Origin: Octopus bimaculoides
Taxonomy: Eukaryota
Assembly: GCF_001194135.2 (NCBI RefSeq)
Contig: NC_069008.1
Coordinates: 16,801,442 to 16,843,344 of the forward strand
Reading direction: 5' to 3'
Length of the DNA stretch: 41,903 nucleotides
The notes beneath the pieces were generated by a model that made no database searches, was not told where the DNA came from, and worked only from the letters and a program-made list of their open reading frames with translations. This document shows positions 1,541-21,814 of the stretch, one piece after another. The number at the start of each line of letters is the position of its first letter. Positions within the stretch are counted from its first letter, which is position 1. The position numbers and the translations under genes were made by a program.

Positions 1541-3692
1541 NNNNNNNNNNNNNNNNNNNNNNNNNNNNNNNNNNNNNNNNNNNNNNNNNNNNNNNNNNNN
1601 NNNNNNNNNNNNNNNNNNNNNNNNNNNNNNNNNNNNNNNNNNNNNNNNNNNNNNNNNNNNNNNNNNNNNNNNNNNNNNNNNNNNNNNNNNNNNNNNNNNN
1701 NNNNNNNNNNNNNNNNNNNNNNNNNNNNNNNNNNNNNNNNNNNNNNNNNNNNNNNNNNNNNNNNNNNNNNNNNNNNNNNNNNNNNNNNNNNNNNNNNNNN
1801 NNNNNNNNNNNNNNNNNNNNNNNNNNNNNNNNNNNNNNNNNNNNNNNNNNNNNNNNNNNNNNNNNNNNNNNNNNNNNNNNNNNNNNNNNNNNNNNNNNNN
1901 NNNNNNNNNNNNNNNNNNNNNNNNNNNNNNNNNNNNNNNNNNNNNNNNNNNNNNNNNNNNNNNNNNNNNNNNNNNNNNNNNNNNNNNNNNNNNNNNNNNN
2001 NNNNNNNNNNNNNNNNNNNNNNNNNNNNNNNNNNNNNNNNNNNNNNNNNNNNNNNNNNNNNNNNNNNNNNNNNNNNNNNNNNNNNNNNNNNNNNNNNNNN
2101 NNNNNNNNNNNNNNNNNNNNNNNNNNNNNNNNNNNNNNNNNNNNNNNNNNNNNNNNNNNNNNNNNNNNNNNNNNNNNNNNNNNNNNNNNNNNNNNNNNNN
2201 NNNNNNNNNNNNNNNNNNNNNNNNNNNNNNNNNNNNNNNNNNNNNNNNNNNNNNNNNNNNNNNNNNNNNNNNNNNNNNNNNNNNNNNNNNNNNNNNNNNN
2301 NNNNNNNNNNNNNNNNNNNNNNNNNNNNNNNNNNNNNNNNNNNNNNNNNNNNNNNNNNNNNNNNNNNNNNNNNNNNNNNNNNNNNNNNNNNNNNNNNNNN
2401 NNNNNNNNNNNNNNTTATTTGTTTACTTGTTTCAGTCATTAGACTGGGGCCATGCTGGAGCACCATCTCGGACAATTCTTAGTCAGATTAGTTGACTCAT
2501 TTATTTTTAATTTTTCAAGGCTAGTACTTATTCTAAAAGTCTTTTTTGCTCACCCACTACGTCATAGGGATGTAAACACACTAACAGCGGTTATCAAGTG
2601 GTGGTGGAAGGAACAAACACAAAGACACATACACTTATACACCCAAGGCACCCCTTCCCACACACACACACATGCCCAATGGTAGGACTGAACTAAGAAC
2701 CACATGGATGTGAAGCAGACTCCTTAACCCCCCGCCCCAGCCCTGCCGTGGTCATGCTTCCACCCCACTCCCAACCCCCAACTCTCATATTCAGAAACTT
2801 ACATTTTCTTATGGGTCCAGGGTGGCTCGAATTCTTTACACAAGTCCGGGTTGGTGTCGTAGCTAATCGTGTTCCACGTCTTGACGTCCCTCCTGAGCAA
2901 ACGGTTCCACAGGAAATCCAAGGAGGTCAGGCACTGCCAGTGTTTGGACACATGTGCGCAGGTGCAAAGATCCTTGGCACCAAGGTAGGAAAATATCTGT
3001 AACTTCATCTCTTGCTGGATATTCAACAAAAGACAGAATAATAACAAAAATTAATTATGCTGATAATAATAATAATGATAATAATAATAATAATAATAAT
3101 ATATTCACAGACACGGCAGAGCTGGGACCTATATACACTGGAAGCTATGCCAACACTATGGAATAACAACAGAAAAAAGATGGTATAAACACAAGCCAGA
3201 AAAGGTCACAGAAAACGAGAAAGCAACCATACTCTGGGATATGCCAATACACACAGATAGAGAAATTAAGGCAAATAGACCAGATATAGTTGTCAGAGAT
3301 CATGAAGGAAAAAAATGCTTTCTAATAGATGTATCAATACCAGCAGATGACAACGTTTCCCTAAAAGAAATGGAAAAACTTTCAAAATACAAAGACCTGG
3401 AAATAGAGGTAACTCGAATGTGGAATNNNNNNNNNNNNNNNNNNNNNNNNNNNNNNNNNNNNNNNNNNNNNNNNNNNNNNNNNNNNNNNNNNNNNNNNNN
3501 NNNNNNNNNNNNNNNNNNNNNNNNNNNNNNNNNNNNNNNNNNNNNNNNNNNNNNNNNNNNNNNNNNNNNNNNNNNNNNNNNNNNNNNNNNNNNNNNNNNN
3601 NNNNNNNNNNNNNNNNNNNNNNNNNNNNNNNNNNNNNNNNNNNNNNNNNNNNNNNNNNNNNNNNNNNNNNNNNNNNNNNNNNNNNNNNNNNN

Positions 3693-3748
<56 letters not shown>

Positions 3749-4652
3749 GCCCGGATGCAGTAACAAGCAGTGGCTCTCATGGCTTCTGACCTTAATTGAT
3801 TGGAAATGTTATCATGTACGTTGTTTTGTCTTGGTATAAAAAGATGGGCTACAGCAAATATTCTGCTTAATACCACAGATTTGCTTGTCAGTTGTTTGAC
3901 CTTAACCAGTTGAGCATGTCCCTTGGTGGCTGACGATATGTGCATCTCTGATCATGAGCAGAAGTAGTGGGGGAACATCATAGCCATGTATTGAGAGGAA
4001 TTCTTTGGGGGTTTGAATAATTCAACTTTGGAAACATGGGTGTTTAGCTCAACATCCTTAAACAAACCTTATTCAGGGACCTTTTGAGCGGGATGAGCTA
4101 CTCGACCTGAAGAAAATTCTAACTGGGCCCCACCTGCGAGGTCATGCGCCGTTTCTCTTCATATGATATGGAGTAGTCGGAATGCTAAGGGGTTAAGGTA
4201 TTTCTGCTGATAGCAAGAACATGGCGTGACAGGGTTAATAAAATAAAGGATTGTCTGATAATGGTGGTAGGGGCTTATTTGATTAAATAGTCAGTCCCCA
4301 TTATTAAAATAAATGCAAATAAGAACATAAAGGGATCGTATTTACCGGGAGCATGTCAAACGTAAGCACGAGTTCATTGGTTGAAGCTGTCATGGCGGAG
4401 TATTCTCGCGGAGATTGTGACTGCGTGGTGCTGTTGCCATGGTTACCGATACCACCGGTCACCTGATGCTGAGAAGGGGTCATCGAATTCGACGGCAGTT
4501 TGTGCAGGTTCCTTTGCAGTCCACCTATGGAGACAAAGTGGTCGTCGCTGTTGATGAGGTCTTTGTAAAGATGCAGGAGAGCATCCATGTTTGAGGTGTC
4601 GAGAAGTCCTTCAGTCATGGTGGTGGTGGCGGTGGTGGCAGTCGTTGGTGGT
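294..4652 (-). CDS. FBXO4: F-box only protein 4 (partial, spliced). Exons on the minus strand: >4652..4346, 3014..2803, 1434..1223, 500..294; continues beyond base 1
   Basis: GT-AG exons with consistent phases (0,2,1,1). Spliced product: ...LTFDMLP|QEMKLQIFSYLGAKDLCTCAHVSKHW (F-box)...HKK|IYRHCCP...KIGIFGPGLE...SFS|GVGSFFLMSISNLTFSLTVMYSCAKKDRERA...LDAFIFVVDA. This follows the FBXO4 motif order (F-box, YRxCCP, FGPGLE, GxGS, LYS..K.R.RA, DGFIYV). The start codon is uncertain (Met at 4618 or upstream in the gap). Confidence 0.9.
722..1010 (+). repeat. Two tandem copies of a ~125-bp dispersed repeat (GACCCCCTTCGGTCA.GAATGACCATGGGATTGCACC...); relatives at 41160-41280(+) and 25262-25310(-)
   Basis: Direct comparison of 722-840 with 866-990. 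Confidence 0.8.
3100..3426 (+). mobile_element. 5'-truncated RLE-type non-LTR retrotransposon (R4/Dong-like) 3' fragment
   Basis: RH..GTYIHWKLCQHY...ILWDMPIHTDREIKANRPDIVV...LIDVSIP...EKLSKYKDL (PD-(D/E)xK restriction-like endonuclease). (TAA)n at the 5' junction (about 3062-3100) and after the gap (3693-3745). Confidence 0.85.
3745..4180. repeat. Dispersed repeat also present inverted at about 33230-33480 and 41600-41903 (the last with an internal ~110-bp duplication, period 130)
   Basis: Shared GCAAATATTCTGCT.AATACCACAGATTTGCTTGTCAGTTG and CATGATAACA.TTCCAATCA segments. Confidence 0.75.
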
Positions 4653-5238
4653 NNNNNNNNNNNNNNNNNNNNNNNNNNNNNNNNNNNNNNNNNNNNNNNN
4701 NNNNNNNNNNNNNNNNNNNNNNNNNNNNNNNNNNNNNNNNNNNNNNNNNNNNNNNNNNNNNNNNNNNNNNNNNNNNNNNNNNNNNNNNNNNNNNNNNNNN
4801 NNNNNNNNNNNNNNNNNNNNNNNNNNNNNNNNNNNNNNNNNNNNNNNNNNNNNNNNNNNNNNNNNNNNNNNNNNNNNNNNNNNNNNNNNNNNNNNNNNNN
4901 NNNNNNNNNNNNNNNNNNNNNNNNNNNNNNNNNNNNNNNNNNNNNNNNNNNNNNNNNNNNNNNNNNNNNNNNNNNNNNNNNNNNNNNNNNNNNNNNNNNN
5001 NNNNNNNNNNNNNNNNNNNNNNNNNNNNNNNNNNNNNNNNNNNNNNNNNNNNNNNNNNNNNNNNNNNNNNNNNNNNNNNNNNNNNNNNNNNNNNNNNNNN
5101 NNNNNNNNNNNNNNNNNNNNNNNNNNNNNNNNNNNNNNNNNNNNNNNNNNNNNNNNNNNNNNNNNNNNNNNNNNNNNNNNNNNNNNNNNNNNNNNNNNNN
5201 NNNNNNNNNNNNNNNNNNNNNNNNNNNNNNNNNNNNNN

Positions 5239-5277
<39 letters not shown>

Positions 5278-5841
5278 TATATGTATGTATATATATACGA
5301 TGGGCTTCTTTCAGTTTCCATCTACCAAATCCACTCAAAAGTGTGTGGTCAGCCCAAGGCTATAGTAGAAGACACTTGCCCAAGGTACCATGCTGTGGGA
5401 CTGAACTTGGAACCATCTGGTTGGGAAGCAAGCTTCTTACCAAACACCCACGCGTACGCCTGGGGGCGAAATTAAAATTTTAAAATTAAGTTTNNNNNNN
5501 NNNGGGGGGGGAGAAGGGACAGGAAATCGAAATCCGCTGCCAATGAAAACAGGAACCTGGGCCAACATGCAAGATAAACTTCGATTTGGGATTTGGTTTG
5601 CAAGATTCTTTACGTGAATTCTTGTGTTGAAACGTCATGGGTCAGTGATTACGCCAAATATTAATAACACACGCACTGATTCAAATTCCACTCCTTTACT
5701 ATTAGTTAATCAATTAAATACCTAACTTATTAAATCAATTGTTTGTTTAACTTGTTGGTTAAGTTGTCAGTTGTTTGTTTTGTTTCCGTTTGTTATTTGT
5801 AAACACAGGAGTGGTACGAAATATAGCCAACAAGTTAAATC

Positions 5842-7750: not shown

Positions 7751-9824
7751 AGGACTTTGAATGTGTGAATGTATGCGTATGTGTGTGTGTGTGTGTGTGC
7801 TATTTATAGGCTGGCGGTGACGTAACTTTGACAACTGGTAAACTTCCAGCGTGGAATTGGCTGCCGTGGGGACCCCTACGTGGTCGCCAGGTCTGCTAGA
7901 AATAGCAACAAAATTCTTTCTAGGTCATAGCTGTGTGGTGAAGAAGCTAGCTTCGCAACTGTGTGGTCTTGAGTTCAGTCCCACTGCGCATTGTTGTTGA
8001 AGAAATCGATCCCCACCAGGACTTATTCTTTGGAAGCCTAGTACTTATTCTATCGGTCTCTTTTTGCCGAACCGCTAAGTTACGGGGACGTAAACACACC
8101 AGCATCGGTTGTCAAGCGATGGTGGTGGGAGGGACAAACACAGACACAAAGACACACACACGCATACATATACGAAGGGCTTCTTTCAGTTTCCGTCAGC
8201 CAAATCCACTCATAAGGCTTTGGTCGGCCCAAGGCTGTTGTAGAAGACACTTGCCCAAGGTGTCAAGTGATGGGACTGAACCCGGAACCATGTGGTTGGA
8301 AAACAAGTTTTTTCTTTCTTTACCGTAGAAAATTTCATTAAAAATTACCCATTTTTCTGGAAGTTATGAGGAAACAAATTCGTGTGTGTTTATGTGTGTG
8401 TGTGTGTGTTTATGTGTGTGTGTGTTTATGTGTGAGGGTACACTTGTCTAGGTATGCCATAAAATTTATTTTTGTTTCAAGACATATATGAATTTCGTTT
8501 CGTCTACCGGATATCAAAGTCTATTTTTGTATTTACTCCAGTCTCGAAGTATCTAAAACTATTTTGTTACTTCAATTCCCCCCCTTTTTTTTTCTTTCTT
8601 TTTTTGCTGACTTTGATTTCTTCCGAAGTTTCCTTTAATTCTTTCTTTTCACGCTGTAACCTTAAAATACATAATAAAAGTATGTTATGATTCGAAAGCG
8701 ATCTGACTTCTATTTCTAGCAGACGAAGCGATCAGGTAAAGAGCCCTCACTTCCCCCTCACACCATCTCCTTGACGCTATCCGCATCCGGACGGCGTGCA
8801 GAACTGTCAAGAGGAGATAATTACATAATTGGATGTTACAGAAATACTTATTGCCAGATAGGTGGCGCTGAAATACGGAAGATTATTTCCGACGCTAATC
8901 GTCACCATTACACAATACCCAAACTTAATCCTTACCATTAATATTCCTGTCGTTTATTGTTACCATTCCCTTTGCAGACGCTAATCTTTACAATTAATAT
9001 TCTTGGCGGTAAATAGTCACTATCACCATTTTCCACGGCAACCATTGCGATAACCATTTCCGACGCTGATCGTCAGCATTGCCCTTACAGACGCCATTCT
9101 AAACCTTTATCATATCTGTCGATATGATAACCATTTTCTCTCACTAATCAATTAACATTACAATTTTCGAAGGTAATCCTGAATATTGCCAGGTCCCGAC
9201 GCTAATCGTTACCGTTGCAATTTCCGACGCAAATCGTTGATTAAGGGAAATCTAACTTCTATTTCTAGCAAACCTAGCGACCACGTAAAGACCCACCCCG
9301 GTATCTCAACCCCCTCACACCATCTCTGTCGTTCTATTGAACGTCCGGACGGCGTGGTTAGAGTCGTAAAGGGGGAGATAATTACAATGATACATACAGC
9401 TTAGTTGTCAGTATAAATAGTTAGGTGTCGCTACTCGTATAGTGAAAGAGCAGTGCAGCACAAGGCATCATGGTAATTGGATAATTTTCTTTTTTTCCAC
9501 CTTTTTTCAAATATCTTTTCGTGTGGAAATTTCTATTCTTGTTACCGTGGAAAAAAATTTCTTAAATATATTTATTATCTTTATCGTGTCTAAAATATTT
9601 CTGTCGATATCGGCTTCTTATAGTGTGCTCTGTACGTTATGTCGTGATGTGAATGATGGTGATGATGTCTTGAAGTTAATATTTCTTTCGTGTGGGAAAC
9701 CCTTTTTCTAGAATCCTGATGAATGTCTCCCTCTCTTATTTACGACTCTGATTTTACCGGTCATCTAATGTCAGAATATCTGTAAGCCAACCTTGTAGCA
9801 ACTTCCCCTTTCACTTCTTTCTCT

Positions 9825-10175
9825 CTTTCTGTGTCCCTATCTCTCCCCTTCCTCTCTTTCCCCTCCCTTTGTCTCTCTCTGATTTTTTCCCTTTCCCTCC
9901 CTTTATATTCCTTTCTATCTATCCATCTCCCTCTCGCTCATTCTTTCTGTGTCCCTATCTCTCCCCTTCCTCTCTTTCCCCTCCGTTTGTCTCTCTGATT
10001 TTTTCCCTTTCCCTCCCTTTATATTCCTCTCTATCTATCCATCCCCCTCTCGCTCATTCTTTCTGTGTCCCTATCTCTCTCCCTTCCTCCCTCCCTCCCT
10101 TTGTCTCTCTCTGATTTTTTTTGCCTTTCCCTCCCTTTATATTCCTCTCTATCTATCCGTCTCTCTCTCTTTTTC
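9825..10175. repeat. Pyrimidine-rich ~117-bp tandem repeat, 3 copies
   Basis: CTTTCTGTGTCCCTATCTCTC recurs at 9825, 9943 and 10059. Confidence 0.85.
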
Positions 10176-10406
10176 ACTTTCTCCATTCAACGAGGGAAAA
10201 AACCCCGTGCACGGTGTGGTAGCTCGGCCTGCTAGGAATAGCAGCTAAACTCTCCCCCGACGCACGTAATAACCCTTTTAAAGGAAAGAAGGAAAAAAAA
10301 CAAACAAACAATGTAATTATACACACATGCATATATAGACCATCGCCCTTCTCACCATACACATATACGACTGGATGGCCTCGGTTGGAACTCCTCTTCG
10401 TCACAG

Positions 10407-10509
10407 GTCTTCTCTTTCTGGGCTGACCTCAGGCCAAACAACAGCGATCTGGAATTAATTCCGGCAGAATCTTCCATCACTGGACCGCAAACACCACCAA
10501 CTCCATTGG
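10407..10509 (+). other. Candidate non-coding 5' UTR exon of GTF3A
   Basis: Acceptor ctcctcttcgtcacAG at 10405-10406 and donor TGG|GTAAAT at 10510; no ATG in the exon; an acceptor is available at 11550 just before the GTF3A ATG. Confidence 0.4.
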
Positions 10510-11574
10510 GTAAATCACGCATTCTTGGCATAACTATATACACACTACGATTTATACATACATACACACATGCATGATTCCGAACAATATGTAAATATAT
10601 TCAAATTAACTCCGGGGAAAGCACCTGCCCTTTGCTGGCATTTTTGCGTAGAAACCACGTTTGTGTATATATATATATGTAATGTTTGTGTATATAGTTA
10701 TTCCATGTGTATATACATACTGACTATAAAGCACTTAACACAGTAACAAGGCTTTATCATCTTGGTGTGTGTATATGTATGTATATGAATGTATGTATGC
10801 ACACACTCACGCAGACGTGTATATATATATAGATGAGAAATTATGCTAAACATTGGACTATTGTATTCTACATGGAACTCTAAAACTCACCAGTACCAGT
10901 TTTACCTCTAGCTGTACATACACCATATAACACTATATATATGCGTTTAAAATATACATCATAGACGTGTATATAACGAACTATCTATATATACCCGGTT
11001 ATCGTACCCGTACATATACACAAGAACTGAAGATTTTGGTATTATATTATGGATACAAAGAACCAAGCGATGACAATTTTGTTGTAATTAAGCATGATTA
11101 TCTTTCGTTTCATTTATGCCTCATTCTTTGATTAATTATTACATCTAAATTACCTTCCAAGGCCTGCTATTTCATTTTTTTTTTTTTTTAATGAAATGTT
11201 CTTCTACCCTAAACGGTAGAATTCCAGACTGTCTCCCTCCACCGGCGCCTAATTCTTCACGCCATCAAATTTTATTCCACTCTTTTGAATTCATACGTAT
11301 AACTTTTAACTGACCGAACATCAATAATTCCCCGAATTCCTCTGTTAATACCATTTTTTTTCTCTCTCCATTTCTGCAAGACTGTATAAGATAAACTGCT
11401 TGCACAGGTGTGCCACCGAACATTATGTCATTTAATTAACTTGTGCCATATCCCACCTTATTCCCTCCATTTTTTTTTTCACTGTCTTTTACTGCCGCAA
11501 GGCTCATTAGGCTGAAATCAGACATTTTTTATGTTTTTGTCTACGTTTAGGTATATATATCTTGAACCTACGGA

Positions 11575-13824
11575 ATGAGTTCTTCAACCCAAAATACCCG
11601 GACGACCTATGTGTGCTCTGTAGGTGGGTGTTCTAAGATATTTAGTAAGAAACTTTATCTTGATCAGCACATCCGCCAGCACACTGGAGAGAGACCGTTC
11701 CATTGCACGAATGAAGGCTGTGGCAAGACCTACTCCAGAAAAGACCACCTCAACCGACACTTAAAATGGTGTTCAGCTTCACGGTCGGCCGGTTCCAGGG
11801 AGAGGCTAACATGTTCTGAAAACGGCTGCTCAAAAACATTCCAGAACTTGCAGAATCTGCGTGTGCATTTACGCAATGTGCACGAGCGGAGTAAAAATTA
11901 TAAATGCCCAGTTGAAGGTTGTGGAAAAGTTTTCAAAAAGCACCATGGATTAAAACAACATGAGTTTGAACACAGCGGGGTCAACCCTTTCTTTTGCATG
12001 CAGTCTGGTTGCAAGAAATCCTTTCACGTCTTCAGTCATTTCAAACGACACATGAAAGTGCACGATGGCTATAAATGCGAGCAGTGCGCGGAAACATTTG
12101 AAAAGTGGACGCAGTTGATTAGACACAGGTCAACACATCATCGGCCACCACAGAAATGTCCACACTGTGATAAAACGTTTGCTTCGAAATTATGTTTGAA
12201 GAAACATATCAAAGTACATTCAGAGACGCGTGAGGTGTTCATATGTTCGCGAGACGGTTGCGGACGTTACTACACAATGAAACGAAACCTTGTCGCTCAC
12301 ATAAAGTCCTACCATGATGGGCGTCGATTTCCTTGCTCCCACGAGGGCTGCAGCCGTAGTTTTCCATTTAAGCATAAAATGTTGGAGCACGTGAAGAGCC
12401 ATATTCGTGTTCATCCCCTGAAGAAAAAATACCCAAAAAAAGGCCACCGTAAAAGATCCATGGCGAGTCGACTGTCTGGTTATATACCCACAACATCTAC
12501 ATCAACATGTCGTAGCACAGAACTCGTCCCACCAGTACAGCCGAGAGATAATAATTCTGTTATTTCTAAAGCCGTTACTAATAACATTAATGCTAGCCAC
12601 TCCCTGGACACAGGCCGTACAGATGGACCTAAGGCCCCTAATCAACCCTCTAATGTTTCAGTTATTTCTCCAGTCTCAAATGATGTCAAGGTTGCAGACC
12701 GCAGTTGTGATAAAGGGTCACGAGAAATGTGTAATGCCGACAAAGAGAGGACACCCACCAATTTGAAACCACCTCCTCGTGATACTGTCATACACCTAGC
12801 ATCATCAAAGCCATCCGGTAGCAGCCAGATTAAACCGACCCACACAACAACGACTGCTCAATGTTGCAGCAACACCAAAAAGGATAAAATGAATTTGAAT
12901 TCACCAAAAGAAGTAGCAACCGAAACCAACAAGGTTAAAGCTAGTCGTACGCCTCTCCCAACAACAAATATCAAATTTGCTGATTCTGGACATAAACAGT
13001 CAAGCAGCTGCCATAAGGAAACAGTAATTACCTCTGTAACTCATTCACAGTGTCAAGACAGTTCTACCCCTGGTTATCCCAGCCAGAATTCAGTAAAGAA
13101 ACCAACCAATAAATACACCTGTTCTGTCAAAAGTTGTGGCAAAGAATTTGTGTCTGCATCTTCTTTGAAAATTCATCTGTTTTATCATACGGAGATGCAA
13201 TGTTCTGCCTCCATGGATAGTTCTGCCAAACAACAAATGGACGATATTCTTTATTCAACCAAAGACTGTGTCGAAGTGTTTAGAAGTTCGAGGCCTTCCT
13301 CCAAACACCAACCTTGGAATAACAGCACTAACAGTGGCGGCAGCCGCAGTAACGCATCTTCCTGTATCTCTTCCACTTCTCCATCCCACCATTCCTCGCA
13401 AGCGCCAACCCAAACCCCCAATCAAAAACACCAGTTGCCAAGCTCCACTGCGACCACAGCGCAAGGGCCGACTTACCTCCACCAAAAACTTCTCTGTTCC
13501 ATATGCGGGGACATATTTTTCAGCAGTTCGTTGCTCAGTCAGCACTTAAGAAGCCATCCTTCGGCAGCACGCAACTCGTTCTCCTGCCCCAAACCGGGTT
13601 GTGGTCAGGTATTCTTGGAAAAATCTAAACTTGACCTGCATGTCAAAGACCACTCCAGTCATCGTTCCAAATCCCATCCCATCTTCCAGTGCCCGTTAAA
13701 TGACTGCGACATGACTTTTAAGTCCCAGTCACAGCTCAAAACCCATGCCAATCTTCATTCCATTAAGAAATACTCAAAGTCTAAGCAAAAACTAGCCAAA
13801 ATTATCTTGGGGAAATATTTCTAA
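11575..13824 (+). CDS. GTF3A: Transcription factor IIIA-like zinc-finger protein, 749 aa, single coding exon, 9+4 zinc fingers
   Basis: Nine tandem fingers with TFIIIA spacing and motifs (HTGERPF, KRHMKVHDGYKC, KWT.L, F.C.RDGC.R.YT..NL..HI.S.H, C.HEGC), followed by KRSMASRLSGYIP (compare the TFIIIA KRSLASRLTGY motif). Four further C2H2 fingers at about 13114, 13489, 13579 and 13684. Acceptor AG at 11549-11550 and an in-frame TGA at 11563 fix the ATG. Confidence 0.9.
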   Translation: MSSSTQNTRTTYVCSVGGCSKIFSKKLYLDQHIRQHTGERPFHCTNEGCGKTYSRKDHLNRHLKWCSASRSAGSRERLTCSENGCSKTFQNLQNLRVHLRNVHERSKNYKCPVEGCGKVFKKHHGLKQHEFEHSGVNPFFCMQSGCKKSFHVFSHFKRHMKVHDGYKCEQCAETFEKWTQLIRHRSTHHRPPQKCPHCDKTFASKLCLKKHIKVHSETREVFICSRDGCGRYYTMKRNLVAHIKSYHDGRRFPCSHEGCSRSFPFKHKMLEHVKSHIRVHPLKKKYPKKGHRKRSMASRLSGYIPTTSTSTCRSTELVPPVQPRDNNSVISKAVTNNINASHSLDTGRTDGPKAPNQPSNVSVISPVSNDVKVADRSCDKGSREMCNADKERTPTNLKPPPRDTVIHLASSKPSGSSQIKPTHTTTTAQCCSNTKKDKMNLNSPKEVATETNKVKASRTPLPTTNIKFADSGHKQSSSCHKETVITSVTHSQCQDSSTPGYPSQNSVKKPTNKYTCSVKSCGKEFVSASSLKIHLFYHTEMQCSASMDSSAKQQMDDILYSTKDCVEVFRSSRPSSKHQPWNNSTNSGGSRSNASSCISSTSPSHHSSQAPTQTPNQKHQLPSSTATTAQGPTYLHQKLLCSICGDIFFSSSLLSQHLRSHPSAARNSFSCPKPGCGQVFLEKSKLDLHVKDHSSHRSKSHPIFQCPLNDCDMTFKSQSQLKTHANLHSIKKYSKSKQKLAKIILGKYF

Positions 13825-13850
13825 AATATTAATTAAAAATATCCTCACTA

Positions 13851-13894
<44 letters not shown>

Positions 13895-14299
13895 GAGTTC
13901 AAATGCCACCAATGTCAACTTTGCCTTTCATCTTTTTGGGAGTCGATAAAATAAGTACCAGTTATGCACTGGGGTTGATGTAATTGATGTGCCACCTCCC
14001 CTGAACTTGGAGGCCTTGTGCCAAAATTTGAAACCATTATTATTATCATTAAAAAAAAGTGGTGAGCTGGCTGAATCATTAGCACACTAGACAAAATGCC
14101 TAGCGTCCATCTCTACGTTCTGAGTTCAAATTCTGCCAAGGTTGACTTAGCTTTTCATCGTTTTGGGGCTGATTATATTAAAGTGCCAATTGCACCCTAG
14201 AGTTCATTGTAATCAACCTACTCCCTCCTTAAAATTTCTGGCCTTTTGCCAAAATTTCAATTTATTTTTATTTTTATTATTATTTAAGATGTCTCTTTT

Positions 14300-14490
14300 A
14301 GTTGTTTCGGTCATTTGACTGCGGCCATGCTGGAGCACCGCTTTCAGTCGGGCAAATTGACCCCAGGACTTATTCTTTGTGAGCCTAGTAATTATTCTGT
14401 CGGTCTCTTTTGCCGAACCGCTAAGTTACGGGGGCATAAACACACCACCATCGGTTGTCAAGCGATGTTGGGGGGGACAAACATATACAC
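14300..14490 (+). mobile_element. Dispersed repeat family D (representative copy). Others at about 2415-2640, 6330-6520(-), 8018-8160, 30630-30785(-), 35640-35890(-); short ends at 190-240, 32378-32416, 40835-40865
   Basis: Recurrent TTTCAGTCATTTGACTGCGGCCATGCTGGAGCACC...GCCGAACCGCTAAGTTACGGGG...GGTTGTCAAGCGATG. Confidence 0.8.
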
Positions 14491-14664
14491 ACATACATAT
14501 ATACATATATATATGATGGGCTTCTTTCAGTTTCCGTCTACCAAATCCACTCACAAGGCTTTGGTCGACTCAAGGCTATAGTAGAAGACACATGCCCAAG
14601 GTGTCATGCAGTGGGACTGAACCCGGAACCATGTGGTTGGTAAGCAAGCTCTTACCACACAGCC

Positions 14665-15130
14665 TCTCCTGTGCTGCACAGCATCCAATATCGTGTGTAC
14701 CGGTGGGGTTTGCACTGTTTGCCAAGTCACAACAGGGACCTCGGATACAGAGTACTTTACGCAATATGCGTGCAGTTCCATGTAATGCCAACTTTTGCAA
14801 TACACCTAGATTGTAGGGTATTTCTAAGGTTTTCAGATGTTTCTTCAGGTTGGGTGGTATTGAACCCAATGCTCCGATGACAATAGGGACAACCTTTATA
14901 TTTGACTTTCGTAGATGCCACATCTGAGCGATCTCAATTCTCAGGTCTCCATATTTATTAATCTTTTTCTCTTGTGATAATATGTTGATCTCCCGGCACT
15001 GCCACATCAATTATTATTGGGCCCTCTTGTTTGTCCCTCTTAAAGGTTACTTTATCCAGCCTTCGATGATCTAACACCCCTCGTCTGTCTGGAAGTCCAA
15101 ATCCCAGACGATTTTTGCCTTCCCCTTTTT
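14665..15130 (-). mobile_element. R4/Dong-like RLE LINE 3' fragment, second subfamily
   Basis: KAKIVWDLDFQTD...IIDVAVP...EKKINKYGDL...VVPIVIGALGSI...LHGTARILRKVL; TAA-like tract at the 5' junction (about 15130-15146). Confidence 0.8.
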
Positions 15131-16006
15131 ATTATTATTTATTTCTTTATTGCCCCCAGGGGGCTAAACATGGAGGGGACAAACAAGGACAGACAAAGGG
15201 ATTTAGTTGATTGCATCAACCCCCAGTGCGTAACTGGTACTTAATTTCATCTGTCTTCACGTTCTGAGTTCAAATTCCACCGAGGTTGACTTTGCCTTTC
15301 ATCCTTTCAGGATCAATACATTGAGTACCAGTGATGCACTGGGGGTTGTTGTAATTTACTAGTCCCCTCCCTACAAATTTGAGGCCTATAAAGCTGAACA
15401 GCATTTCGTCCGTCTTAAATGTTTTAAGGTCAATTTCCACCGAGGTTGACTCTGCCTTTCGTCCTTTCAGGGGTCGATAAAATAAGTACCAGTTGAACAC
15501 TGGGGTCAATGTTATTGACTCATCCCCTCCCCTAAAAATTGCTGCCCTTGTGGCAAAATTTAAAACCATTATTATCATTGTATATTTAAGAGATGAGGAC
15601 TTATGTACATTATTTATATTTGGCGGATTTTTGTCCTCATCTTGTTTGTATGGCGTAGTGGTTGAGGGCACAGGCTACTAACCCCAAGGTTCTGAGTTCA
15701 ATTCCAAGCAGTGACCTGAATAATAATAATAATAAATAATAACAATAATATCGAAAAATACCTTAGGAATGAGAACCTAGGTTCGAAATTTCCCCAAGAC
15801 ACCTGATGAAGGCTGGAGGGTATATCAGCTAAAATGTCGTGTTAACAAACAAGGACAAATATCCGTCAAATGTAAATAATTTATTATTATTATTAAGATG
15901 GTGAGCTAGCAGCACCGTTAGCACGCTGGACAAAATGCTTAGCGGTATTTCGTCCGTCGCTATGTTCTGAGTTCAAATTCCGCCAAGGTCGACTTTAAAG
16001 TTATCA

Positions 16007-16166
16007 TATGTTGTCAACTTAATGTGACAGTCCCATGAAAGGAAAGAATGCTACTGTTATTTAGTCCTAGGAAACACCGCTTCCCATTGGACCCGGTGTT
16101 TCCTAGGGCTAAATAACAGTAGCATTCTTCCCTTTCATGGGACTGTCACATTAAGTTGACAACATA
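16007..16166. repeat. 73-bp inverted repeat with 14-nt loop (MITE-like)
   Basis: Arms 16007-16079 and 16094-16166; 71 of 73 positions Watson-Crick. Confidence 0.95.
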
Positions 16167-16908
16167 CCATCACTTTATCGTGCTGCTACTGCATAAATCT
16201 CTCTGAGAGATTTAGAAATATATTATTTTGAGGTCAACTTTGCCTTTCATTCTTTCAGGGGTCAATGAATCAAGTACCAGTTACTCACTGGGGTCGATGT
16301 AATCGACTTAATCCCTTCCCCCAAATTTGAGGCTTTACACCTATAGTAGAAAGAATTCTTTTTATTATCGATAAAGGTGGCAAAATGGCAGAATCGTTAG
16401 CGTGTCGAACGAAATGTTCTTGAGTTCAATTTTTCATTTCACTCCTTTTTTGGTATCGGTCAATAAAATTAGTACCAGTTGCACACTGGGGAGTTGATGT
16501 AATCGAATTACTCACCCCCCACTCCTCGACAATTTCAGGCCTTGTGCTTATAGTAGAAAGAATTATTATTATTATTATTGAGATTAAATGAATGGTTCAA
16601 GCGAATGTCAGACAGAGTCTCTGCTCGTACAAATAGTTTAGCATTGCACTTTATAGTTTGCTAGTGAAGGGGACGCTGTGTATTGAGTACTAAGTTTTTC
16701 TGTAAATTTGTAAACCTGTCTGATCTATGCTGCTGTAAATACAAGATGGAATGTGTAGCTTTATGTTAGCATGTCTGCTGGTTCTGTTTTATGTACATTT
16801 TTCTATGCCAGCAAGGGTTGGCTGAGTCCAAATGTGTATATAATATATTTTTACGGAGATGTACTTGCATAGCAAGTGACCTGATCTGAGATCGTGTGCT
16901 GGAATGAA

Positions 16909-17142
16909 AACAATTGCAGTGTGGAAGATGTTTATAAGCCATTTAAGAAACACACCAAAACCGTTAGATTCACTTCAACATTTAAGTTTAATTTGCCAAA
17001 ATATTTTCATCGCTTTGAGACGGAATTTTGTCAGTAAACAGGCCGCGGTCTCAAAGCGACGAAAATATTTTGGGAAATTGAATTTAAATGTTTTGGTGTG
17101 TTTCTTAAATAGCTTATAAACACCTTCTACACTGCAATTGTT
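16909..17142. repeat. Long imperfect foldback element
   Basis: Arms 16909-17021 and 17048-17142 with a 26-nt spacer; the right arm runs into a gap. Confidence 0.9.
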
Positions 17143-17646
17143 ATNNNNNNNNNNNNNNNNNNNNNNNNNNNNNNNNNNNNNNNNNNNNNNNNNNNNNNNN
17201 NNNNNNNNNNNNNNNNNNNNNNNNNNNNNNNNNNNNNNNNNNNNNNNNNNNNNNNNNNNNNNNNNNNNNNNNNNNNNNNNNNNNNNNNNNNNNNNNNNNN
17301 NNNNNNNNNNNNNNNNNNNNNNNNNNNNNNNNNNNNNNNNNNNNNNNNNNNNNNNNNNNNNNNNNNNNNNNNNNNNNNNNNNNNNNNNNNNNNNNNNNNN
17401 NNNNNNNNNNNNNNNNNNNNNNNNNNNNNNNNNNNNNNNNNNNNNNNNNNNNNNNNNNNNNNNNNNNNNNNNNNNNNNNNNNNNNNNNNNNNNNNNNNNN
17501 NNNNNNNNNNNNNNNNNNNNNNNNNNNNNNNNNNNNNNNNNNNNNNNNNNNNNNNNNNNNNNNNNNNNNNNNNNNNNNNNNNNNNNNNNNNNNNNNNNNN
17601 NNNNNNNNNNNNNNNNNNNNNNNNNNNNNNNNNNNNNNNNNNNNNN

Positions 17647-17679
<33 letters not shown>

Positions 17680-18026
17680 GATATATAAGTATGTATAATA
17701 TATATATATGAATATAAGTATACATGATATGTATGTATTGTATATAATATATACATACAGGTTTACTGGAGTGGAAGTATGTGTATGTTTGTGTGATTGT
17801 ATATATTTATTAAACTTTTGCAGGGCAAAAGTTGGCAGTGACTTCGAAGTATCGGGTTGCTCGCCTTCATCAGACTAACGCAAGCAATTAGACTGATACT
17901 TCACAATGACTGTCAACCATTTCCTTGTAAAAGTTTAACGAACGTGTGTTCTACTAAAATGTATTAATCCTTCAATTTAATGTTCAATTGTCCTTGTATA
18001 TAGCTTCACATTAAAATATACATACA

Positions 18027-18076
<50 letters not shown>

Positions 18077-18359
18077 NNNNNNNNNNNNNNNNNNNNNNNN
18101 NNNNNNNNNNNNNNNNNNNNNNNNNNNNNNNNNNNNNNNNNNNNNNNNNNNNNNNNNNNNNNNNNNNNNNNNNNNNNNNNNNNNNNNNNNNNNNNNNNNN
18201 NNNNNNNNNNNNNNNNNNNNNNNNNNNNNNNNNNNNNNNNNNNNNNNNNNNNNNNNNNNNNNNNNNNNNNNNNNNNNNNNNNNNNNNNNNNNNNNNNNNN
18301 NNNNNNNNNNNNNNNNNNNNNNNNNNNNNNNNNNNNNNNNNNNNNNNNNNNNNNNNNNC

Positions 18360-18650
18360 TCATGTGCCACCCGCACAAGAACCAGTCCAGGGGCACTGGC
18401 AACGATCTTACTTGGCTTGCCGGGTCTTCTCACGCACAGCACATTTCCAAAGGTCTCTGTCAGTAGTCATCGCCTCGGTGAGGCCCAATGTATGAAGGTC
18501 TTGCCTCACCACCTCAGCGCAGGTCTTCCTGGGCCTACCTCTTCCACGGGTTCCCTCAACTGTTAGGGTGTGGCACTTTTTCACACAGCTATCCTCATCC
18601 ATTCTCACCACATGTCCATACCAGCGCAATCATCTCTCTTGCACGCCACA
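18360..18650 (-). mobile_element. RTE-like LINE 3' fragment
   Basis: LRWYGHVVRMDEDSCVKKC...EGTRGRGRPRKT..EVVRQDL, an RTE C-terminal motif. Confidence 0.75.
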
Positions 18651-18976
18651 ACTGATATGTATATATATAGCAGATATACTTGTTTATATGTCTTTATAAA
18701 TATGTGGACACATGCTTATGTATGTGTGTGTGTGTGCGTTATAAAACGAAGGTAATTAACCTCATTAAGGGATCATAAATCCAATGAAAACACTGGTTAA
18801 TTACCAATTTATACAATGGCAAACATATAAACCGTGGTTCATATATATACGTTTAAAGAATGAGAAAATGGTTGTAATTTTAGAAATTAATTATCTTTAG
18901 ATTTCTGAATCGAAACAGCTGTCAGAATTGTCATATTTTATAATTAGTGATTTTATTAATTACCTCTCCATTTTCT

Positions 18977-19010
<34 letters not shown>

Positions 19011-19221
19011 TGTGTGTGTGCACGTGTATATAGACATTCACTCATGTATATATTGCACTTGTTTTGTTCTGCTTCGGATAGTTACACATTTGCTGTCTGT
19101 GTCTGCGTGTAGAATTAACCCACCTTTCATCTAAAGTATGTTGTATGAACAGGTACTTGTGTGTGTTTATAAACACACACATGTACATATATATGAATAT
19201 ATATATCTGTACTTATATATA

Positions 19222-19253
<32 letters not shown>

Positions 19254-19722
19254 CATATGTATTTATATATCTCTACACATTTGGATTTGTGTATATATAT
19301 GTGTGTGTGTGTATATATATATGAACATGTTTATATGTATGAGTGTAAATGTTTGTACATATGTATATATTTTTTATGTATGAAAAAAATATTGTCACAC
19401 AAAAGTTTGTGTTCTTGTTTCTAGTATTTATAAATTTAAATGAACTTATTATCATTATTATTATTATTATTAATTATTAAAGTGGTGAGCTGGCAGAATC
19501 GTTACCATAGAGGGCAAAGTTCTTGGCAGTATTTCGTCTGTCTTTACGTTCTGAGTTCCAATCCAGCTGAGGTCGACTTTTACCATTTATCCTTCTGGGC
19601 TCGATGAAACAAGTACCAGTTGAACACTGGGGATGGGGGGGGGGAATCGATTTACCCCCTCCATCCCCCGAAATAGCTGGCCTTGTGCCAAAATTTGAAA
19701 GTATTATTATTATTATTATTTA

Positions 19723-19753
<31 letters not shown>

Positions 19754-20775
19754 CATTATTATTATTATTATTATTATTATTGCCATTGAAGTGGTTAGCT
19801 GGTGGAACCGTTAGCACGGAGGTCAAAAATGCTTAGCAGCATTTTTACCCGTCTCTACGATCTGAGTTCAAATTCTGCCANNNNNNNNNNNNNNNNNNNN
19901 NNNNNNNNNNNNNNNNNNNNNNNNNNNNNNNNNNNNNNNNNNNNNNNNNNNNNNNNNNNNNNNNNNNNNNNNNNNNNNNNNNNNNNNNNNNNNNNNNNNN
20001 NNNNNNNNNNNNNNNNNNNNNNNNNNNNNNNNNNNNNNNNNCTTTAGATTTTTCTACTTTTTCTGTGTATTTAGTATATGATAGTACCAAAAACAATGTA
20101 ACTTTTACTCATGCCAAATGATAAGAGGGCGCAGGGCAAACCCCCAAACAGAATTCCCTGCTCCCTCGCAAAAACATAAACAAAAAGTTTTTAAAAAAAT
20201 AGAATGTAACAAACAACACAAATCTTTTCAATGAATGAAATGACTTCGTTAATGACTTTACCGATCTGTGTGCCATAAACTGATGGCGGCGGAGGTGGTG
20301 TCACAATAAAAGCAAAGTTAGTTTATGAATAAAAAGAATTTTTTAGAAATTGTTTTCGAGATTTATTATTATTATTGTTGTTGTTATATGTTATTATTTA
20401 TTATTATTATTATTGGATTTTTGTTGTATATCTATCAGTCTGTGTATGTATGTATCTTGGTTGAGGTATTCTCCAAGATGGAGATGAGTACAAACGTCCC
20501 CAATATGGTAGGCTTGATAATTGCTAAGAATTCTTAGCATGAAACCATTGGTCTTGTTAACCCTCATATATATATGAGACAGCCAGATAGACAAATATAT
20601 TTGAGAATTCCATGAAAGGTTGATGTTGAGGTAGTGTTGCAGATAAATGCGATTAGGCTTCATCCTTACATATCTATCTGTCTGGCTGTCTGTCTATCTA
20701 TCTACATACACAGACACACACATATGTAGACACATATATTCAGAAACACACACACATACATACATAGACATATAT

Positions 20776-20808
<33 letters not shown>

Positions 20809-21210
20809 AAGGCACAGGAGTGGCTATGTGGTAAGTAGCTTGCTTACCAACCACATGGTTCTGGGTTCAGTCCCCCACTGCATGATGCCTTGGGCAAGTG
20901 TCTTCTGCTATAAACCTCAGGCTGAATCTCCCCCGAGAACTACGTTAAGGGTGCACGTGTCTGTGGAGTGCTCAGCCACTTGGATGTTAATTTCACGAGC
21001 AGGCTGTTCTGTTGATCAGATCAACTGGAACCCTCATCGTCGTATGTTACGGAGCGCTACTTTATCATGCCTAATTGTGTTTATCTGCTTCATTGTCTCT
21101 CTGCCAAACTTAATTGTATATAGATATATATATATGTATGCATATATACTTATTAACAGTACTACTTATATATATATAATATATATTTTTTTCATTTTTC
21201 AAATTTCTAG

Positions 21211-21628
21211 TATTCAACTCTTATGAAAAATGAGCAAGGTAAGTGCTTCAACCCTTTATGGTTACTCACCCCTCTGCGGTTACCTATGATCCCTTCATAT
21301 AAATCACGTCAGTTTTAAAGTGTTCATATTTAAATTAAAACCTTTCACCTCAACATTTATGTACGTACCTTTTGTTAAGCGATCATCATCATCATCACCT
21401 GTTTTCCATGCTGGGATGGACTGGACAGTTTCACAGGAGGGCCATTCCAGGCGCCAGTTGTCTGCTTTGCCAGACCCTGTAGCCTGCCCCTTCTTAACCA
21501 ACATTTGTAGCGTTCTCTTTCGCTGGTAAGCTTTTACCCGCAAACTTGACTTGAGAAATTTCACGTGTTTGCTTAACAGAACCTTCTCTGCTACTTATAT
21601 CCCCTTCCCTCTTCCTCTACATTTTCCT

Positions 21629-21673
<45 letters not shown>

Positions 21674-21814
21674 CACTACTACTACTACTACTACTATCTC
21701 TGATATTGGTACAACCACCATCGCTACTGCAAATATCACTACTACTGTAGCTGGAGTCACCACCAACACCACCACTACTACTACTGCAGCTCATACTGCC
21801 ACCAGCACCACCAT

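What the first reader, a model, noticed from the sequence alone, without database searches (positions are those of the whole stretch)
11575..13824. TFIIIA with a 13-finger architecture and an intronless CDS
Canonical TFIIIA is about 340-430 aa with 9 fingers and a short tail. Here the 9 fingers and the KRSMASRLSGYIP motif (ending about 12490) are followed by about 200 aa of S/T/P-rich low-complexity sequence, finger 10 (YTCSVKSC...HLFYH, about 13114-13188), a second Ser-rich spacer of about 100 aa, and a cluster of three fingers (about 13489-13758) plus a basic tail. The whole 2250-nt CDS has no intron while the neighbouring genes are intron-rich and vertebrate GTF3A is multi-exon. This suggests retroposition or intron loss plus acquisition of a second zinc-finger module. 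A second DNA/RNA-binding head on the 5S rRNA transcription and storage factor could give it new targets; C2H2-ZNF expansion is a known coleoid feature. The architecture is seen in the sequence; its novelty and function are inference.
Basis: partly seen in the sequence, partly recalled or inferred. Interest (0 to 1): 0.75.

Follow-up and report, generated by a model that had tools for sequence, protein, structure and literature searches.

The report
Cephalopod TFIIIA with duplicated finger module
This octopus gene is the 5S-rRNA transcription factor TFIIIA, and in octopuses, cuttlefish and their relatives it has lost its coding introns and gained a conserved copy of its own last three zinc fingers, a modest but apparently undescribed variant of a classic protein.

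Summary
Window 11575-13824 (+) is one uninterrupted 749-aa ORF with 13 C2H2 motifs at the stated coordinates, in Octopus bimaculoides by my reading of the assembly accession. Fingers 1-9 plus the KRSMASRLSGYIP motif make it the TFIIIA orthologue; RefSeq misnames its O. sinensis counterpart ZXDC/CTCF.

The interpretation needs revising in three ways.
- **Age and spread.** The single-exon CDS and the C-terminal three-finger cluster are shared with decapodiform cephalopods, including Sepia esculenta RNA-seq contigs and a genomic contig. They are old and coleoid-wide. Haliotis and a nemertean have split genes, and no non-cephalopod TFIIIA examined has fingers after finger 9.
- **Origin.** Fingers 11-13 are an internal duplicate of TFIIIA's own fingers 7-9 plus the basic stretch, not a module captured from the ZNF expansion. 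Only finger 10 and the second spacer are octopod-specific.
- **Function.** The extension is under strong purifying selection (dN/dS 0.02-0.04). It has lost most positive charge and typical base-contact residues, so a protein-contact role, such as with TFIIIC, is at least as likely as a second nucleic-acid-binding head.

This is a new variant of a known kind, of moderate interest.

The parts
11575..13824 (+). Complete single-exon CDS of the TFIIIA (GTF3A) orthologue, 749 aa plus stop
   Evidence: Orthologues are 93% and 89% identical in two other octopuses.
11608..12402 (+). Canonical TFIIIA array, fingers 1-9 (aa 12-276). Finger 2 is C2HC. Finger 6 carries the TFIIIA-specific KWT signature.
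   Evidence: PF22110, 34 bits against a cut-off of 27; 1tf6, E 1.3e-30. dN/dS is 0.07.
12403..12489 (+). Basic stretch plus TAS-like motif KRSMASRLSGYIP (aa 277-305). It matches vertebrate KRSLASRLSGYIPP.
   Evidence: dN/dS is 0.15.
12490..13113 (+). Spacer 1, S/T/P-rich and predicted disordered (aa 306-513)
   Evidence: pLDDT below 30. dN/dS is 0.21. It aligns poorly with the decapodiform spacer.
13114..13188 (+). Finger 10 (aa 514-538), an octopod-specific isolated C2H2 finger
   Evidence: dN/dS is 0.04. A beta-beta-alpha unit is predicted. Its origin is unresolved.
13189..13488 (+). Spacer 2 (aa 539-638), an octopod-specific Ser-rich linker
   Evidence: Absent from P0003 and P0004. dN/dS is 0.12. 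pLDDT is below 35.
13489..13758 (+). Fingers 11-13 (aa 639-728), an internal duplicate of fingers 7-9 with the same CX2C, CX4C, CX4C pattern
   Evidence: hhalign places it in register on F7-9, E 3.7e-21. F7-9 is the best of seven three-finger slices. F7-9 of other animals' TFIIIAs outscore every poly-ZNF protein in hand. dN/dS is 0.02.
13759..13821 (+). Basic C-terminal tail SIKKYSKSKQKLAKIILGKYF. It is shared in form with decapodiforms (K.K..L..IIS) and may be a decayed copy of the basic/TAS region.
   Evidence: It has no non-synonymous change against the second octopus. Net charge is +7 in 21 aa.
11400..11574 (+). Conserved block immediately upstream of the ATG (5'UTR or promoter). It includes a splice-acceptor-like ...TTTTTGTCTACGTTTAG|G ending at about 11551.
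   Evidence: About 88% identity to the second octopus contig, against 66-75% further upstream. Its function was not tested.

Best explanation
This is the coleoid-cephalopod orthologue of transcription factor IIIA, and apparently the only TFIIIA gene among annotated octopus proteins.

Shown:
- The N-terminal nine fingers and the basic/TAS-like motif are canonical TFIIIA.
- The CDS is a single exon in octopus and in decapodiform cephalopods, while Haliotis and a nemertean have split genes.
- A C-terminal module of three fingers plus a basic tail is shared by octopods and decapodiforms. It is an internal duplicate of TFIIIA's own fingers 7-9 and the basic stretch after finger 9.
- Octopods alone carry an extra isolated finger 10 and a second spacer between the two arrays.
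- All added fingers are under purifying selection at least as strong as that on fingers 1-9.

Inferred mechanism:
- Fingers 1-9 and the TAS-like motif do the usual job. They bind the internal control region of 5S rRNA genes and 5S rRNA itself, and they recruit TFIIIC.
- The duplicated module hangs on a disordered tether of 220-330 residues. It copies the part of TFIIIA that in yeast contacts TFIIIC subunit tau138 and is needed for transcription activation.
- Because it has lost most of its positive charge and typical base-contact residues, it most likely acts as a second protein-contact module, helped by the basic tail. It could contact TFIIIC or TFIIIA itself. A sequence-specific nucleic-acid reader is less likely.
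- The likely order of events is intron loss first, possibly by retroposition and replacement of the parent gene, followed by an in-frame tandem duplication inside the now intronless ORF. Both happened before octopods and decapodiforms split.
For: Identity as TFIIIA:
- Best PDB hit is Xenopus TFIIIA fingers 1-6, E 1.3e-30.
- Pfam PF22110 passes its cut-off.
- After the cephalopod sequences, the next ~20 profile hits are all annotated TFIIIA/GTF3A, followed by P43.
- The TAS-like motif matches vertebrate KRSLASRLSGYIPP.
- No second octopus or Sepia TFIIIA-like protein appears at E<=1e-40 in 5.8 billion clusters.

Single exon and coleoid-wide:
- P0004 is an uninterrupted ORF on a 54-kb genomic contig.
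- A Sepia-type RNA contig (5'UTR plus CDS) is collinear with that contig.
- One run carrying P0003 is a Sepia esculenta larval RNA-seq run.
- Haliotis (52.6 kb) and Tubulanus genes are split.

Duplication origin:
- hhalign aligns the module in register to F7-9, probability 99.4%, E 3.7e-21.
- The F7-9 slice scores 126.6; the other six three-finger slices score 70-104.
- The module profile's best single-domain hits outside cephalopod modules are F7-9 plus basic stretch of 16 non-cephalopod TFIIIAs, at 51-71 bits.
- Those scores are above all ~150 top poly-ZNF representatives, which reach 49.7 bits at most. The second-best hit inside each cephalopod protein is also its own F7-9.

Constraint:
- dN/dS is 0.04 for F10, 0.02 for F11-13, 0 for the tail and 0.07 for F1-9, at dS about 0.5.
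- In decapodiforms, F12-13 are 80% identical.

Fold:
- AlphaFold2 predicts 13 beta-beta-alpha units.

Mechanism:
- In the yeast cryo-EM study, ZF6-8 and a helix near ZF9 form the interface with tau138, and ZF7-9 are needed for transcription (PMC10245719).
- F11-13 have net charge +4 against +11 for F7-9, with contact positions SSLQ/ESKL/SSQT.
Against: - No functional assay exists, so the role of the extension is inference.
- The margin favouring F7-9 over other finger triplets is moderate in octopus itself. A simple pairwise score there favoured F1-3 (132 against 111), and single-finger core comparisons were uninformative.
- 'Sole TFIIIA' rests on annotated proteomes and transcriptome-derived proteins. 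It does not rest on a whole-genome search.
- No retroposition hallmarks (poly(A) remnant, target-site duplications) were looked for, and they are not expected to survive this long.
- A 5'UTR intron in octopus is not excluded. An acceptor-like site is conserved 24 nt upstream of the ATG, and the octopus contig L006 may be genomic DNA.
- Two decapodiform sequences (P0004, P0249) have lost the cysteines of F11. The decapodiform tail and TAS-like motif are also diverged. The module is therefore not uniformly constrained.
Confidence: 0.7

Rival explanations
1. The C-terminal fingers are a second nucleic-acid-binding head that gives TFIIIA new DNA or RNA targets. Examples would be flanking 5S rDNA, a second 5S repeat, or other RNAs.
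For: They are bona fide C2H2 fingers derived from fingers that bind the 5S gene promoter in Xenopus (PMC2566860). They are followed by a strongly basic tail, +7 in 21 aa. They are under strong purifying selection.
Against: Net charge drops from +11 (F7-9) to +4 (F11-13), and from +8 to +2 in Sepia. Positions -1, 2, 3 and 6 are mostly Ser/Leu/Gln/Thr, and these contact residues differ between octopus and Sepia. F11 has lost its zinc ligands in two decapodiforms. In yeast, ZF6-8 mainly contact TFIIIC rather than DNA.
Confidence: 0.25
2. The gene is a neofunctionalised retrocopy (paralogue), and a canonical short multi-exon TFIIIA exists elsewhere in cephalopod genomes.
For: The CDS is intronless while other lophotrochozoans have split genes. 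The ORF sits inside the first intron of another same-strand gene model, which is a common home for retrogenes. Vertebrates keep a TFIIIA paralogue, P43.
Against: No second TFIIIA-like protein from Octopus or Sepia was found in either database search, although both include RefSeq octopus proteomes and many cuttlefish transcriptome assemblies. The octopus protein keeps the vertebrate-type TAS-like motif, which P43 lacks. Fingers 1-9 are under strong constraint.
Confidence: 0.1
3. Fingers 10-13 were captured from an unrelated C2H2-ZNF gene by fusion or exon shuffling, as part of the coleoid ZNF expansion.
For: Finger 10 has no clear parent. Its best pairwise matches are F4 (E 2e-5) and F1-F2 (E 1e-3). 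Coleoid ZNF expansion is known from the literature (my own knowledge).
Against: For F11-13, TFIIIA F7-9 of many animals outscore every poly-ZNF in the top 150 of 1.84 billion representatives. The CX2C/CX4C/CX4C spacing, the HX4H in the middle finger and the HDG..F.C linker are TFIIIA F7-9 features retained in decapodiforms.
Confidence: 0.07
4. The long ORF is an assembly or annotation artefact, or the extension is a neutrally drifting read-through tail.
For: The window has many N-gaps. RefSeq names for the orthologue are inconsistent, ZXDC and CTCF.
Against: The same architecture appears in independent assemblies of three octopus species and at least three decapodiform sequences, including RNA-seq contigs. 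There is no gap inside the ORF. dN/dS on the added fingers is 0.02-0.04.
Confidence: 0.02

Closest known systems
Metazoan TFIIIA / GTF3A (Xenopus, human)
   Same: It has nine tandem fingers with the same spacing pattern, the finger-6 W signature (PF22110), the short HxGY linker between F5 and F6, and a basic region with the KRS[LM]ASRLSGYIP motif. Best sequence matches are TFIIIA throughout.
   Different: It is about twice as long, 749 aa against 348-366 aa for the vertebrate proteins. It has four more fingers after the TAS-like motif, a C2HC finger 2 and a single-exon CDS. None of 21 non-cephalopod TFIIIA or P43 sequences inspected has a finger after finger 9.
Fungal TFIIIA variants (S. pombe with 10 fingers; Yarrowia lipolytica with an extra finger in a C-terminal extension; S. 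cerevisiae with an 81-residue insert between F8 and F9)
   Same: They show that TFIIIA tolerates extra fingers and long spacers at its C-terminal end (PMC2566860).
   Different: The fungi gain a single finger. Here a whole three-finger copy of F7-9 plus the basic tail is added behind a 220-330-residue disordered tether, and octopods gain a further isolated finger. This is an independent event in animals.
P43 (42Sp43) 5S RNA-binding protein of fish and frogs
   Same: It is a nine-finger TFIIIA relative that binds 5S rRNA, and it shows that the TFIIIA scaffold can be duplicated and specialised.
   Different: P43 arose by whole-gene duplication and lacks the TAS-like motif. It scores well below TFIIIA against the cephalopod profile, E 4.5e-48 against about 1e-75. 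The cephalopod change is an intragenic duplication.
ZXDC and CTCF (the names RefSeq gives the O. sinensis orthologue)
   Same: They are multi-finger C2H2 proteins with generic finger similarity.
   Different: ZXDC proteins score E of about 1e-34 to 1e-42 over a quarter of the query. TFIIIA proteins score 1e-60 to 1e-116. CTCF structures score E 5e-14 against 1.3e-30 for TFIIIA. The names are automated misnomers.

Membership tests
TFIIIA (GTF3A) | Nine tandem C2H2 fingers with the TFIIIA spacing pattern (CX4C in F1-5; a shorter CX2C in F6 here and CX2C in F7; CX4C in F8-9 with HX4H in F8; short F5-F6 linker) | tested here: met
   Regex map. Alignment with nine TFIIIAs has invariant ligands in all nine fingers.
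TFIIIA (GTF3A) | TFIIIA-specific finger 6 signature (Pfam PF22110) above the gathering score | tested here: met
   34.0 bits against a cut-off of 27, aa 157-184.
TFIIIA (GTF3A) | Closest relatives across taxa are bona fide TFIIIA rather than other ZNF families | tested here: met
   PDB best hit is 1tf6, E 1.3e-30. Mytilus GTF3A, Tubulanus, Haliotis and ~15 vertebrate TFIIIAs rank directly after the cephalopod sequences.
TFIIIA (GTF3A) | Basic region and C-terminal transcription-activating motif KRSLASRLSGYIPP after finger 9 | tested here: met
   KRSMASRLSGYIP at aa 293-305, compared with the vertebrate motif. It is diverged in decapodiforms (KKNVVSLLTG). The functional meaning of the motif rests on my knowledge of Xenopus work, not on a test here.
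TFIIIA (GTF3A) | Binds the 5S rRNA gene internal control region and 5S rRNA, and is required for 5S transcription | not testable with these tools
   This needs biochemistry. No 5S gene is present in the window (Rfam).
TFIIIA (GTF3A) | Is the orthologue, with no other TFIIIA gene in the genome | tested here: inconclusive
   No second octopus or Sepia TFIIIA-like protein appears in two searches of 5.8 billion clusters. Whole cephalopod genomes could not be searched.
Retrogene (processed gene copy) | Intronless CDS where relatives have a multi-exon gene | tested here: met
   Window ORF and L001 against Haliotis and Tubulanus.
Retrogene (processed gene copy) | Poly(A) remnant, target-site duplications, and a surviving multi-exon parent gene | not tested
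   The event predates the octopod-decapodiform split, so these hallmarks are not expected to survive. No parent gene was seen among proteins. Stepwise intron loss cannot be excluded.
ZXDC / CTCF (RefSeq names of the orthologue) | Best similarity and domain architecture of those families | tested here: not met
   Both score far below TFIIIA. The TFIIIA-specific PF22110 and the TAS-like motif are present.
P43 5S RNA-binding protein | Nine fingers without the TFIIIA TAS motif; closest to P43 sequences | tested here: not met
   The TAS-like motif is present. P43 proteins rank below all TFIIIAs.

The most novel reading that the evidence does not exclude
Coleoid cephalopods have rebuilt the founding zinc-finger transcription factor. 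A tethered second copy of TFIIIA's TFIIIC-contacting and activating part (fingers 7-9 plus basic tail) changes how the Pol III pre-initiation complex assembles on 5S genes. It could recruit or bridge a second TFIIIC or a second 5S repeat, or act as an intramolecular mimic that regulates the first copy. Octopods then added a further finger. That would be a lineage-specific rewiring of an otherwise near-invariant core transcription factor.
Probability: 0.2. Interest if true: 0.65.

Novelty: new variant of a known kind. Interest (0 to 1): 0.45.

Why it matters
TFIIIA is the protein in which zinc fingers were discovered, and all ~20 non-cephalopod animal TFIIIA and P43 sequences sampled here have the nine-finger layout. 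A conserved, selected 12-13-finger form shared by octopuses and cuttlefish shows that even this core Pol III factor can be remodelled.

It also offers a natural experiment on what fingers 7-9 and the C-terminal activating region do beyond DNA binding, because the duplicate has kept its fold and its constraint while shedding charge.

Practically, the gene is misnamed in RefSeq as ZXDC/CTCF and should be annotated as GTF3A. It is also a clean example of intron loss followed by an intragenic domain duplication that only an intronless ORF would readily allow.

Tried and rejected
- **Simple pairwise scores.** Scoring the C-terminal triplet against each N-terminal triplet gave the clear F7-9 answer in Sepia. 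In octopus it was ambiguous (F1-3 132 against F7-9 111).
- **Single-finger cores.** Similarity matrices of individual finger cores were uninformative. The signal lies in spacing, knuckles and linkers, so I moved to profile methods.
- **Exhaustive representative search.** The search with the module profile was swamped by poly-ZNF proteins through summed scores. It was useful only for finding P0145 and P0249, and as a control set.
- **Origin of finger 10.** Its best pairwise hits are F4 (E 2e-5) and F1-F2 (E 1e-3), with a weak 7-bit match to the F13 position. The origin is left unresolved.
- **Nature of contig L006 (SRR11869390).** I could not establish whether it is RNA or DNA. It therefore supports conservation, but not transcription or the absence of a UTR intron in octopus.
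- **Tail as a decayed TAS copy.** The idea is suggestive by eye only (K..LA..L.G). The profile alignments stop in the basic stretch, so it stays a hypothesis.
- **Literature.** Searches for TFIIIA with cephalopod or octopus found nothing relevant.
- **Fold search.** I did not run one, because the full-length model's mean pLDDT of 48.7 would give meaningless matches.
- **Nautilus or other early-branching cephalopods.** None could be found or recognised in the protein collections.
Full report
**1. Observation**

Window 11575-13824 (+) is a single ORF of 749 codons plus a stop. It is the only long ORF in the 41.9-kb window that is not an N-run artefact.

- F1-9 at aa 12-276.
- KRSMASRLSGYIP at aa 293-305, ending at nt 12489.
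- F10 at aa 514-538 (nt 13114-13188).
- F11-13 at aa 639-728 (nt 13489-13758).

Pfam reports 10 significant zf-C2H2 stretches and the TFIIIA-specific finger model PF22110 above its gathering score. AlphaFold2 on a five-sequence alignment predicts a beta-beta-alpha unit at all 13 sites. pLDDT is about 60-85 for F1-9 and 53-70 for F10-13, and both spacers are disordered with pLDDT below 30.

The exact protein is on record in assembly GCA_001194135.2, chromosome CM046628.1. From my own knowledge that accession is Octopus bimaculoides.

**2. Identity**

- The best solved relative is Xenopus TFIIIA fingers 1-6 (1tf6, E 1.3e-30). Yeast TFIIIA also appears in the list.
- In two searches of 5.8 billion protein clusters, the cephalopod sequences are followed directly by annotated TFIIIA/GTF3A proteins. 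These are Mytilus GTF3A, Tubulanus, Haliotis and about 15 vertebrate TFIIIAs.
- P43 5S-RNA-binding proteins and generic poly-ZNF proteins come only after those.
- The motif after finger 9 is nearly identical to vertebrate KRSLASRLSGYIPP.
- The O. sinensis orthologues are named 'ZXDC isoform X2' (749 aa) and 'CTCF isoform X1' (760 aa). True ZXDC and CTCF score far worse than TFIIIA, so those names are misnomers.
- No second TFIIIA-like protein from Octopus or Sepia appears at E<=1e-40. This is apparently the only TFIIIA, with the caveat that whole genomes could not be searched.

**3. Distribution of the architecture**

- Three octopus sequences share all 13 fingers: the window, O. sinensis at 93% identity, and an unnamed species P0002 at 89%.
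- P0003 (633 aa) comes from 51 contigs of about 3 kb in many sequencing runs. One of those runs, SRR23936174, is a Sepia esculenta larval RNA-seq run.
- P0004 (635 aa, on a 54-kb genomic contig) and the fragment P0249 are further decapodiform-type sequences.
- All of these share fingers 1-9, a long spacer, the C-terminal finger cluster and a similar tail. All of them lack finger 10 and the second spacer.
- F11 has lost its cysteine pair in P0004 and P0249.
- Every non-cephalopod TFIIIA inspected carries no finger after finger 9, including Haliotis with its long tail. The Mytilus model and P0009 exceed nine only through repeated segments within the array.
- The 12-finger form is therefore coleoid-wide. 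It is not general to molluscs, and only the thirteenth finger is octopod-specific.

**4. Gene structure**

- The CDS is uninterrupted in the window and in the decapodiform genomic contig L001.
- The Sepia-type RNA contig L002 (392 nt of 5'UTR plus the CDS) aligns as one collinear block to L001.
- The RNA contigs from different runs share ends, and an AATAAA lies near the 3' end. This fits a transcript of about 3 kb that covers the whole ORF.
- By contrast, the Haliotis asinina gene spans 52.6 kb and the Tubulanus gene 2.8 kb, and both are split into several coding exons.
- Loss of the coding introns is therefore real, derived and old.
- Retroposition is a reasonable cause but was not tested. 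The ORF does lie inside the first intron of a same-strand 302-aa gene model whose CDS starts ATG|GTAATT at 9470.
- In octopus a 5'UTR intron is not excluded. About 180 nt upstream of the ATG is 88% conserved and contains an acceptor-like TTTAG|G at about 11551.

**5. Origin of the extra fingers**

- F11-13 repeat the CX2C, CX4C, CX4C pattern of F7-9.
- Decapodiforms retain the HX4H of finger 8 and the HDG..F.C linker.
- Profile-profile comparison aligns the module in register on F7-9 (probability 99.4%, E 3.7e-21).
- Against each three-finger slice of a TFIIIA profile, F7-9 scores 126.6 while the other six slices score 70-104.
- The decisive control used 300 proteins in hand, including the top ~150 poly-ZNF representatives out of 1.84 billion. 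After the cephalopod modules themselves, the best single-domain matches to the module profile are F7-9 plus the basic stretch of 16 non-cephalopod TFIIIAs (51-71 bits). Every poly-ZNF scores 49.7 bits or less.
- The second-best hit within each cephalopod protein is its own F7-9.
- The module is therefore an intragenic duplicate, not a capture from the coleoid ZNF expansion.
- An in-frame duplication running from finger 7 to near the stop codon is easy in an intronless ORF and awkward in a split gene. In Haliotis the last exon starts only after finger 9. This suggests intron loss came first, which is inference.
- Finger 10's origin is unresolved.

**6. Constraint**

Values below compare the window with the second octopus, at dS of about 0.5.

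| Region | dN/dS |
|---|---|
| F1-9 | 0.07 |
| TAS-like region | 0.15 |
| Spacer 1 | 0.21 |
| F10 | 0.04 |
| Spacer 2 | 0.12 |
| F11-13 | 0.02 |
| Tail | 0 |

Between two decapodiforms, where dS is near saturation, F12-13 stay 80% identical. F11, the spacer and the tail are relaxed there. The extension is not neutral.

**7. How it probably works**

- Fingers 1-9 and the TAS-like motif should perform the canonical functions. This is established family knowledge and was not tested here.
- The duplicated part corresponds to the region that forms the interface with TFIIIC tau138 in the yeast TFIIIA-TFIIIC-DNA cryo-EM study. There the interface is ZF6-8 and a helix near ZF9, and ZF7-9 are needed for transcription rather than for tight DNA binding (PMC10245719).
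- The copy has lost most of its positive charge, +4 against +11 in octopus and +2 against +8 in Sepia. Its helix contact positions are mostly Ser/Leu/Gln/Thr and differ between octopus and Sepia. The tail remains strongly basic.
- I therefore favour a tethered accessory protein-contact module, aimed at TFIIIC or at TFIIIA itself. A new sequence-specific DNA or RNA head is possible but less likely, at about 0.25.

**8. Comparison with what is known, and novelty**

Extra TFIIIA fingers are known in fungi. S. pombe has ten, and Yarrowia has one in a C-terminal extension (PMC2566860). I found no paper linking TFIIIA with cephalopods.

The sequences are public but misnamed. This is a new variant of a known kind. 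It is of moderate interest to Pol III and zinc-finger specialists, and it gives a useful annotation correction.

Noticed in passing
window 9470-23824+ (first coding bases 9470-9472): A same-strand 302-aa gene model with no Pfam hit starts with ATG immediately followed by a GTAATT donor and runs past 23824. The TFIIIA ORF therefore lies inside its first intron. Whether TFIIIA transcripts share that first exon is unknown.
   Followed up: partly
window 11400-11574: The ~180 nt upstream of the ATG is about 88% identical to the second octopus contig, more conserved than sequence further upstream (66-75%). It contains a polypyrimidine tract and TTTAG|G acceptor-like site about 24 nt before the ATG.
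   Followed up: partly
window 11698-11772 (aa 42-66): Finger 2 ends in Cys rather than His (HLNRHLKWC, so C2HC) in all cephalopod sequences. Other TFIIIAs have His at that position.
   Followed up: partly
window 30988-31059 (-): A tRNA-Cys (GCA) gene scoring 66 bits against Rfam tRNA. It was not checked whether it is a functional gene or part of a tRNA-derived SINE.
   Followed up: partly
window 9824-10169: A CT-rich tandem repeat of about 2.9 copies of a 116-bp unit (91% matches) lies between the upstream gene-model start and the TFIIIA ORF.
   Followed up: no
window 8016-8307, 14363-14648 and many other sites (e.g. 5267-5449, 22317-22469, 24343-24505, 29596-29786, 35455-35766): There are many copies, on both strands, of a repeat of about 150-300 bp (80-92% identical). 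It looks like a SINE-type interspersed element, and one copy sits about 540 bp downstream of the TFIIIA stop codon.
   Followed up: no
window 13849-13894: A (TAT)15 microsatellite begins 25 nt after the stop codon. The second octopus contig L006 ends in a similar simple repeat.
   Followed up: no
window ~1575-4618 (-) and 27308-27370 (+): Part of a multi-exon F-box (weak Arf) gene model lies on the minus strand upstream. A WD40-like exon fragment ([21 protein letters not shown]) lies downstream. Both are consistent with intron-rich neighbours.
   Followed up: no
window, several stretches (e.g. ~1540-2440, 3430-3700, 4650-5250, 17150-17650, 18080-18400, 29870-30180, 37970-38590, 39500-39990): Runs of N (assembly gaps) explain the very low-GC bins in the composition profile and the spurious long X-filled ORFs. 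None lies within the TFIIIA ORF.
   Followed up: yes
O. sinensis proteins P0001 and P0122 (XP_036371090, XP_029653420): Isoform X1 differs from X2 only by an 11-aa tandem duplication in spacer 1 (GHTDEPKAPDT next to GRTDGPKAPN). The two are named ZXDC and CTCF respectively, and both names look wrong.
   Followed up: partly
P0003 aa ~88-113; P0004 aa ~531-553; P0249 aa ~265-290: Zinc ligands have been lost in particular lineages. Sepia finger 3 lacks its second Cys (CAVEGSEQ), and finger 11 lacks both Cys in P0004 and P0249.
   Followed up: partly
L010 3053-4306 and L011 6001-7749 (ENA ERZ25070167): Two uninterrupted TFIIIA-like ORFs (P0008 417 aa; P0009 582 aa, with a partial duplication of N-terminal fingers) sit on low-coverage contigs of an unidentified organism, one next to a reverse-transcriptase-like ORF. 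These may be independent intronless TFIIIA copies.
   Followed up: no
P0005 (Mytilus edulis GTF3A, 553 aa): The model contains three near-identical copies of the finger 8-9 segment. This is probably an assembly or gene-model artefact rather than a real expansion.
   Followed up: no
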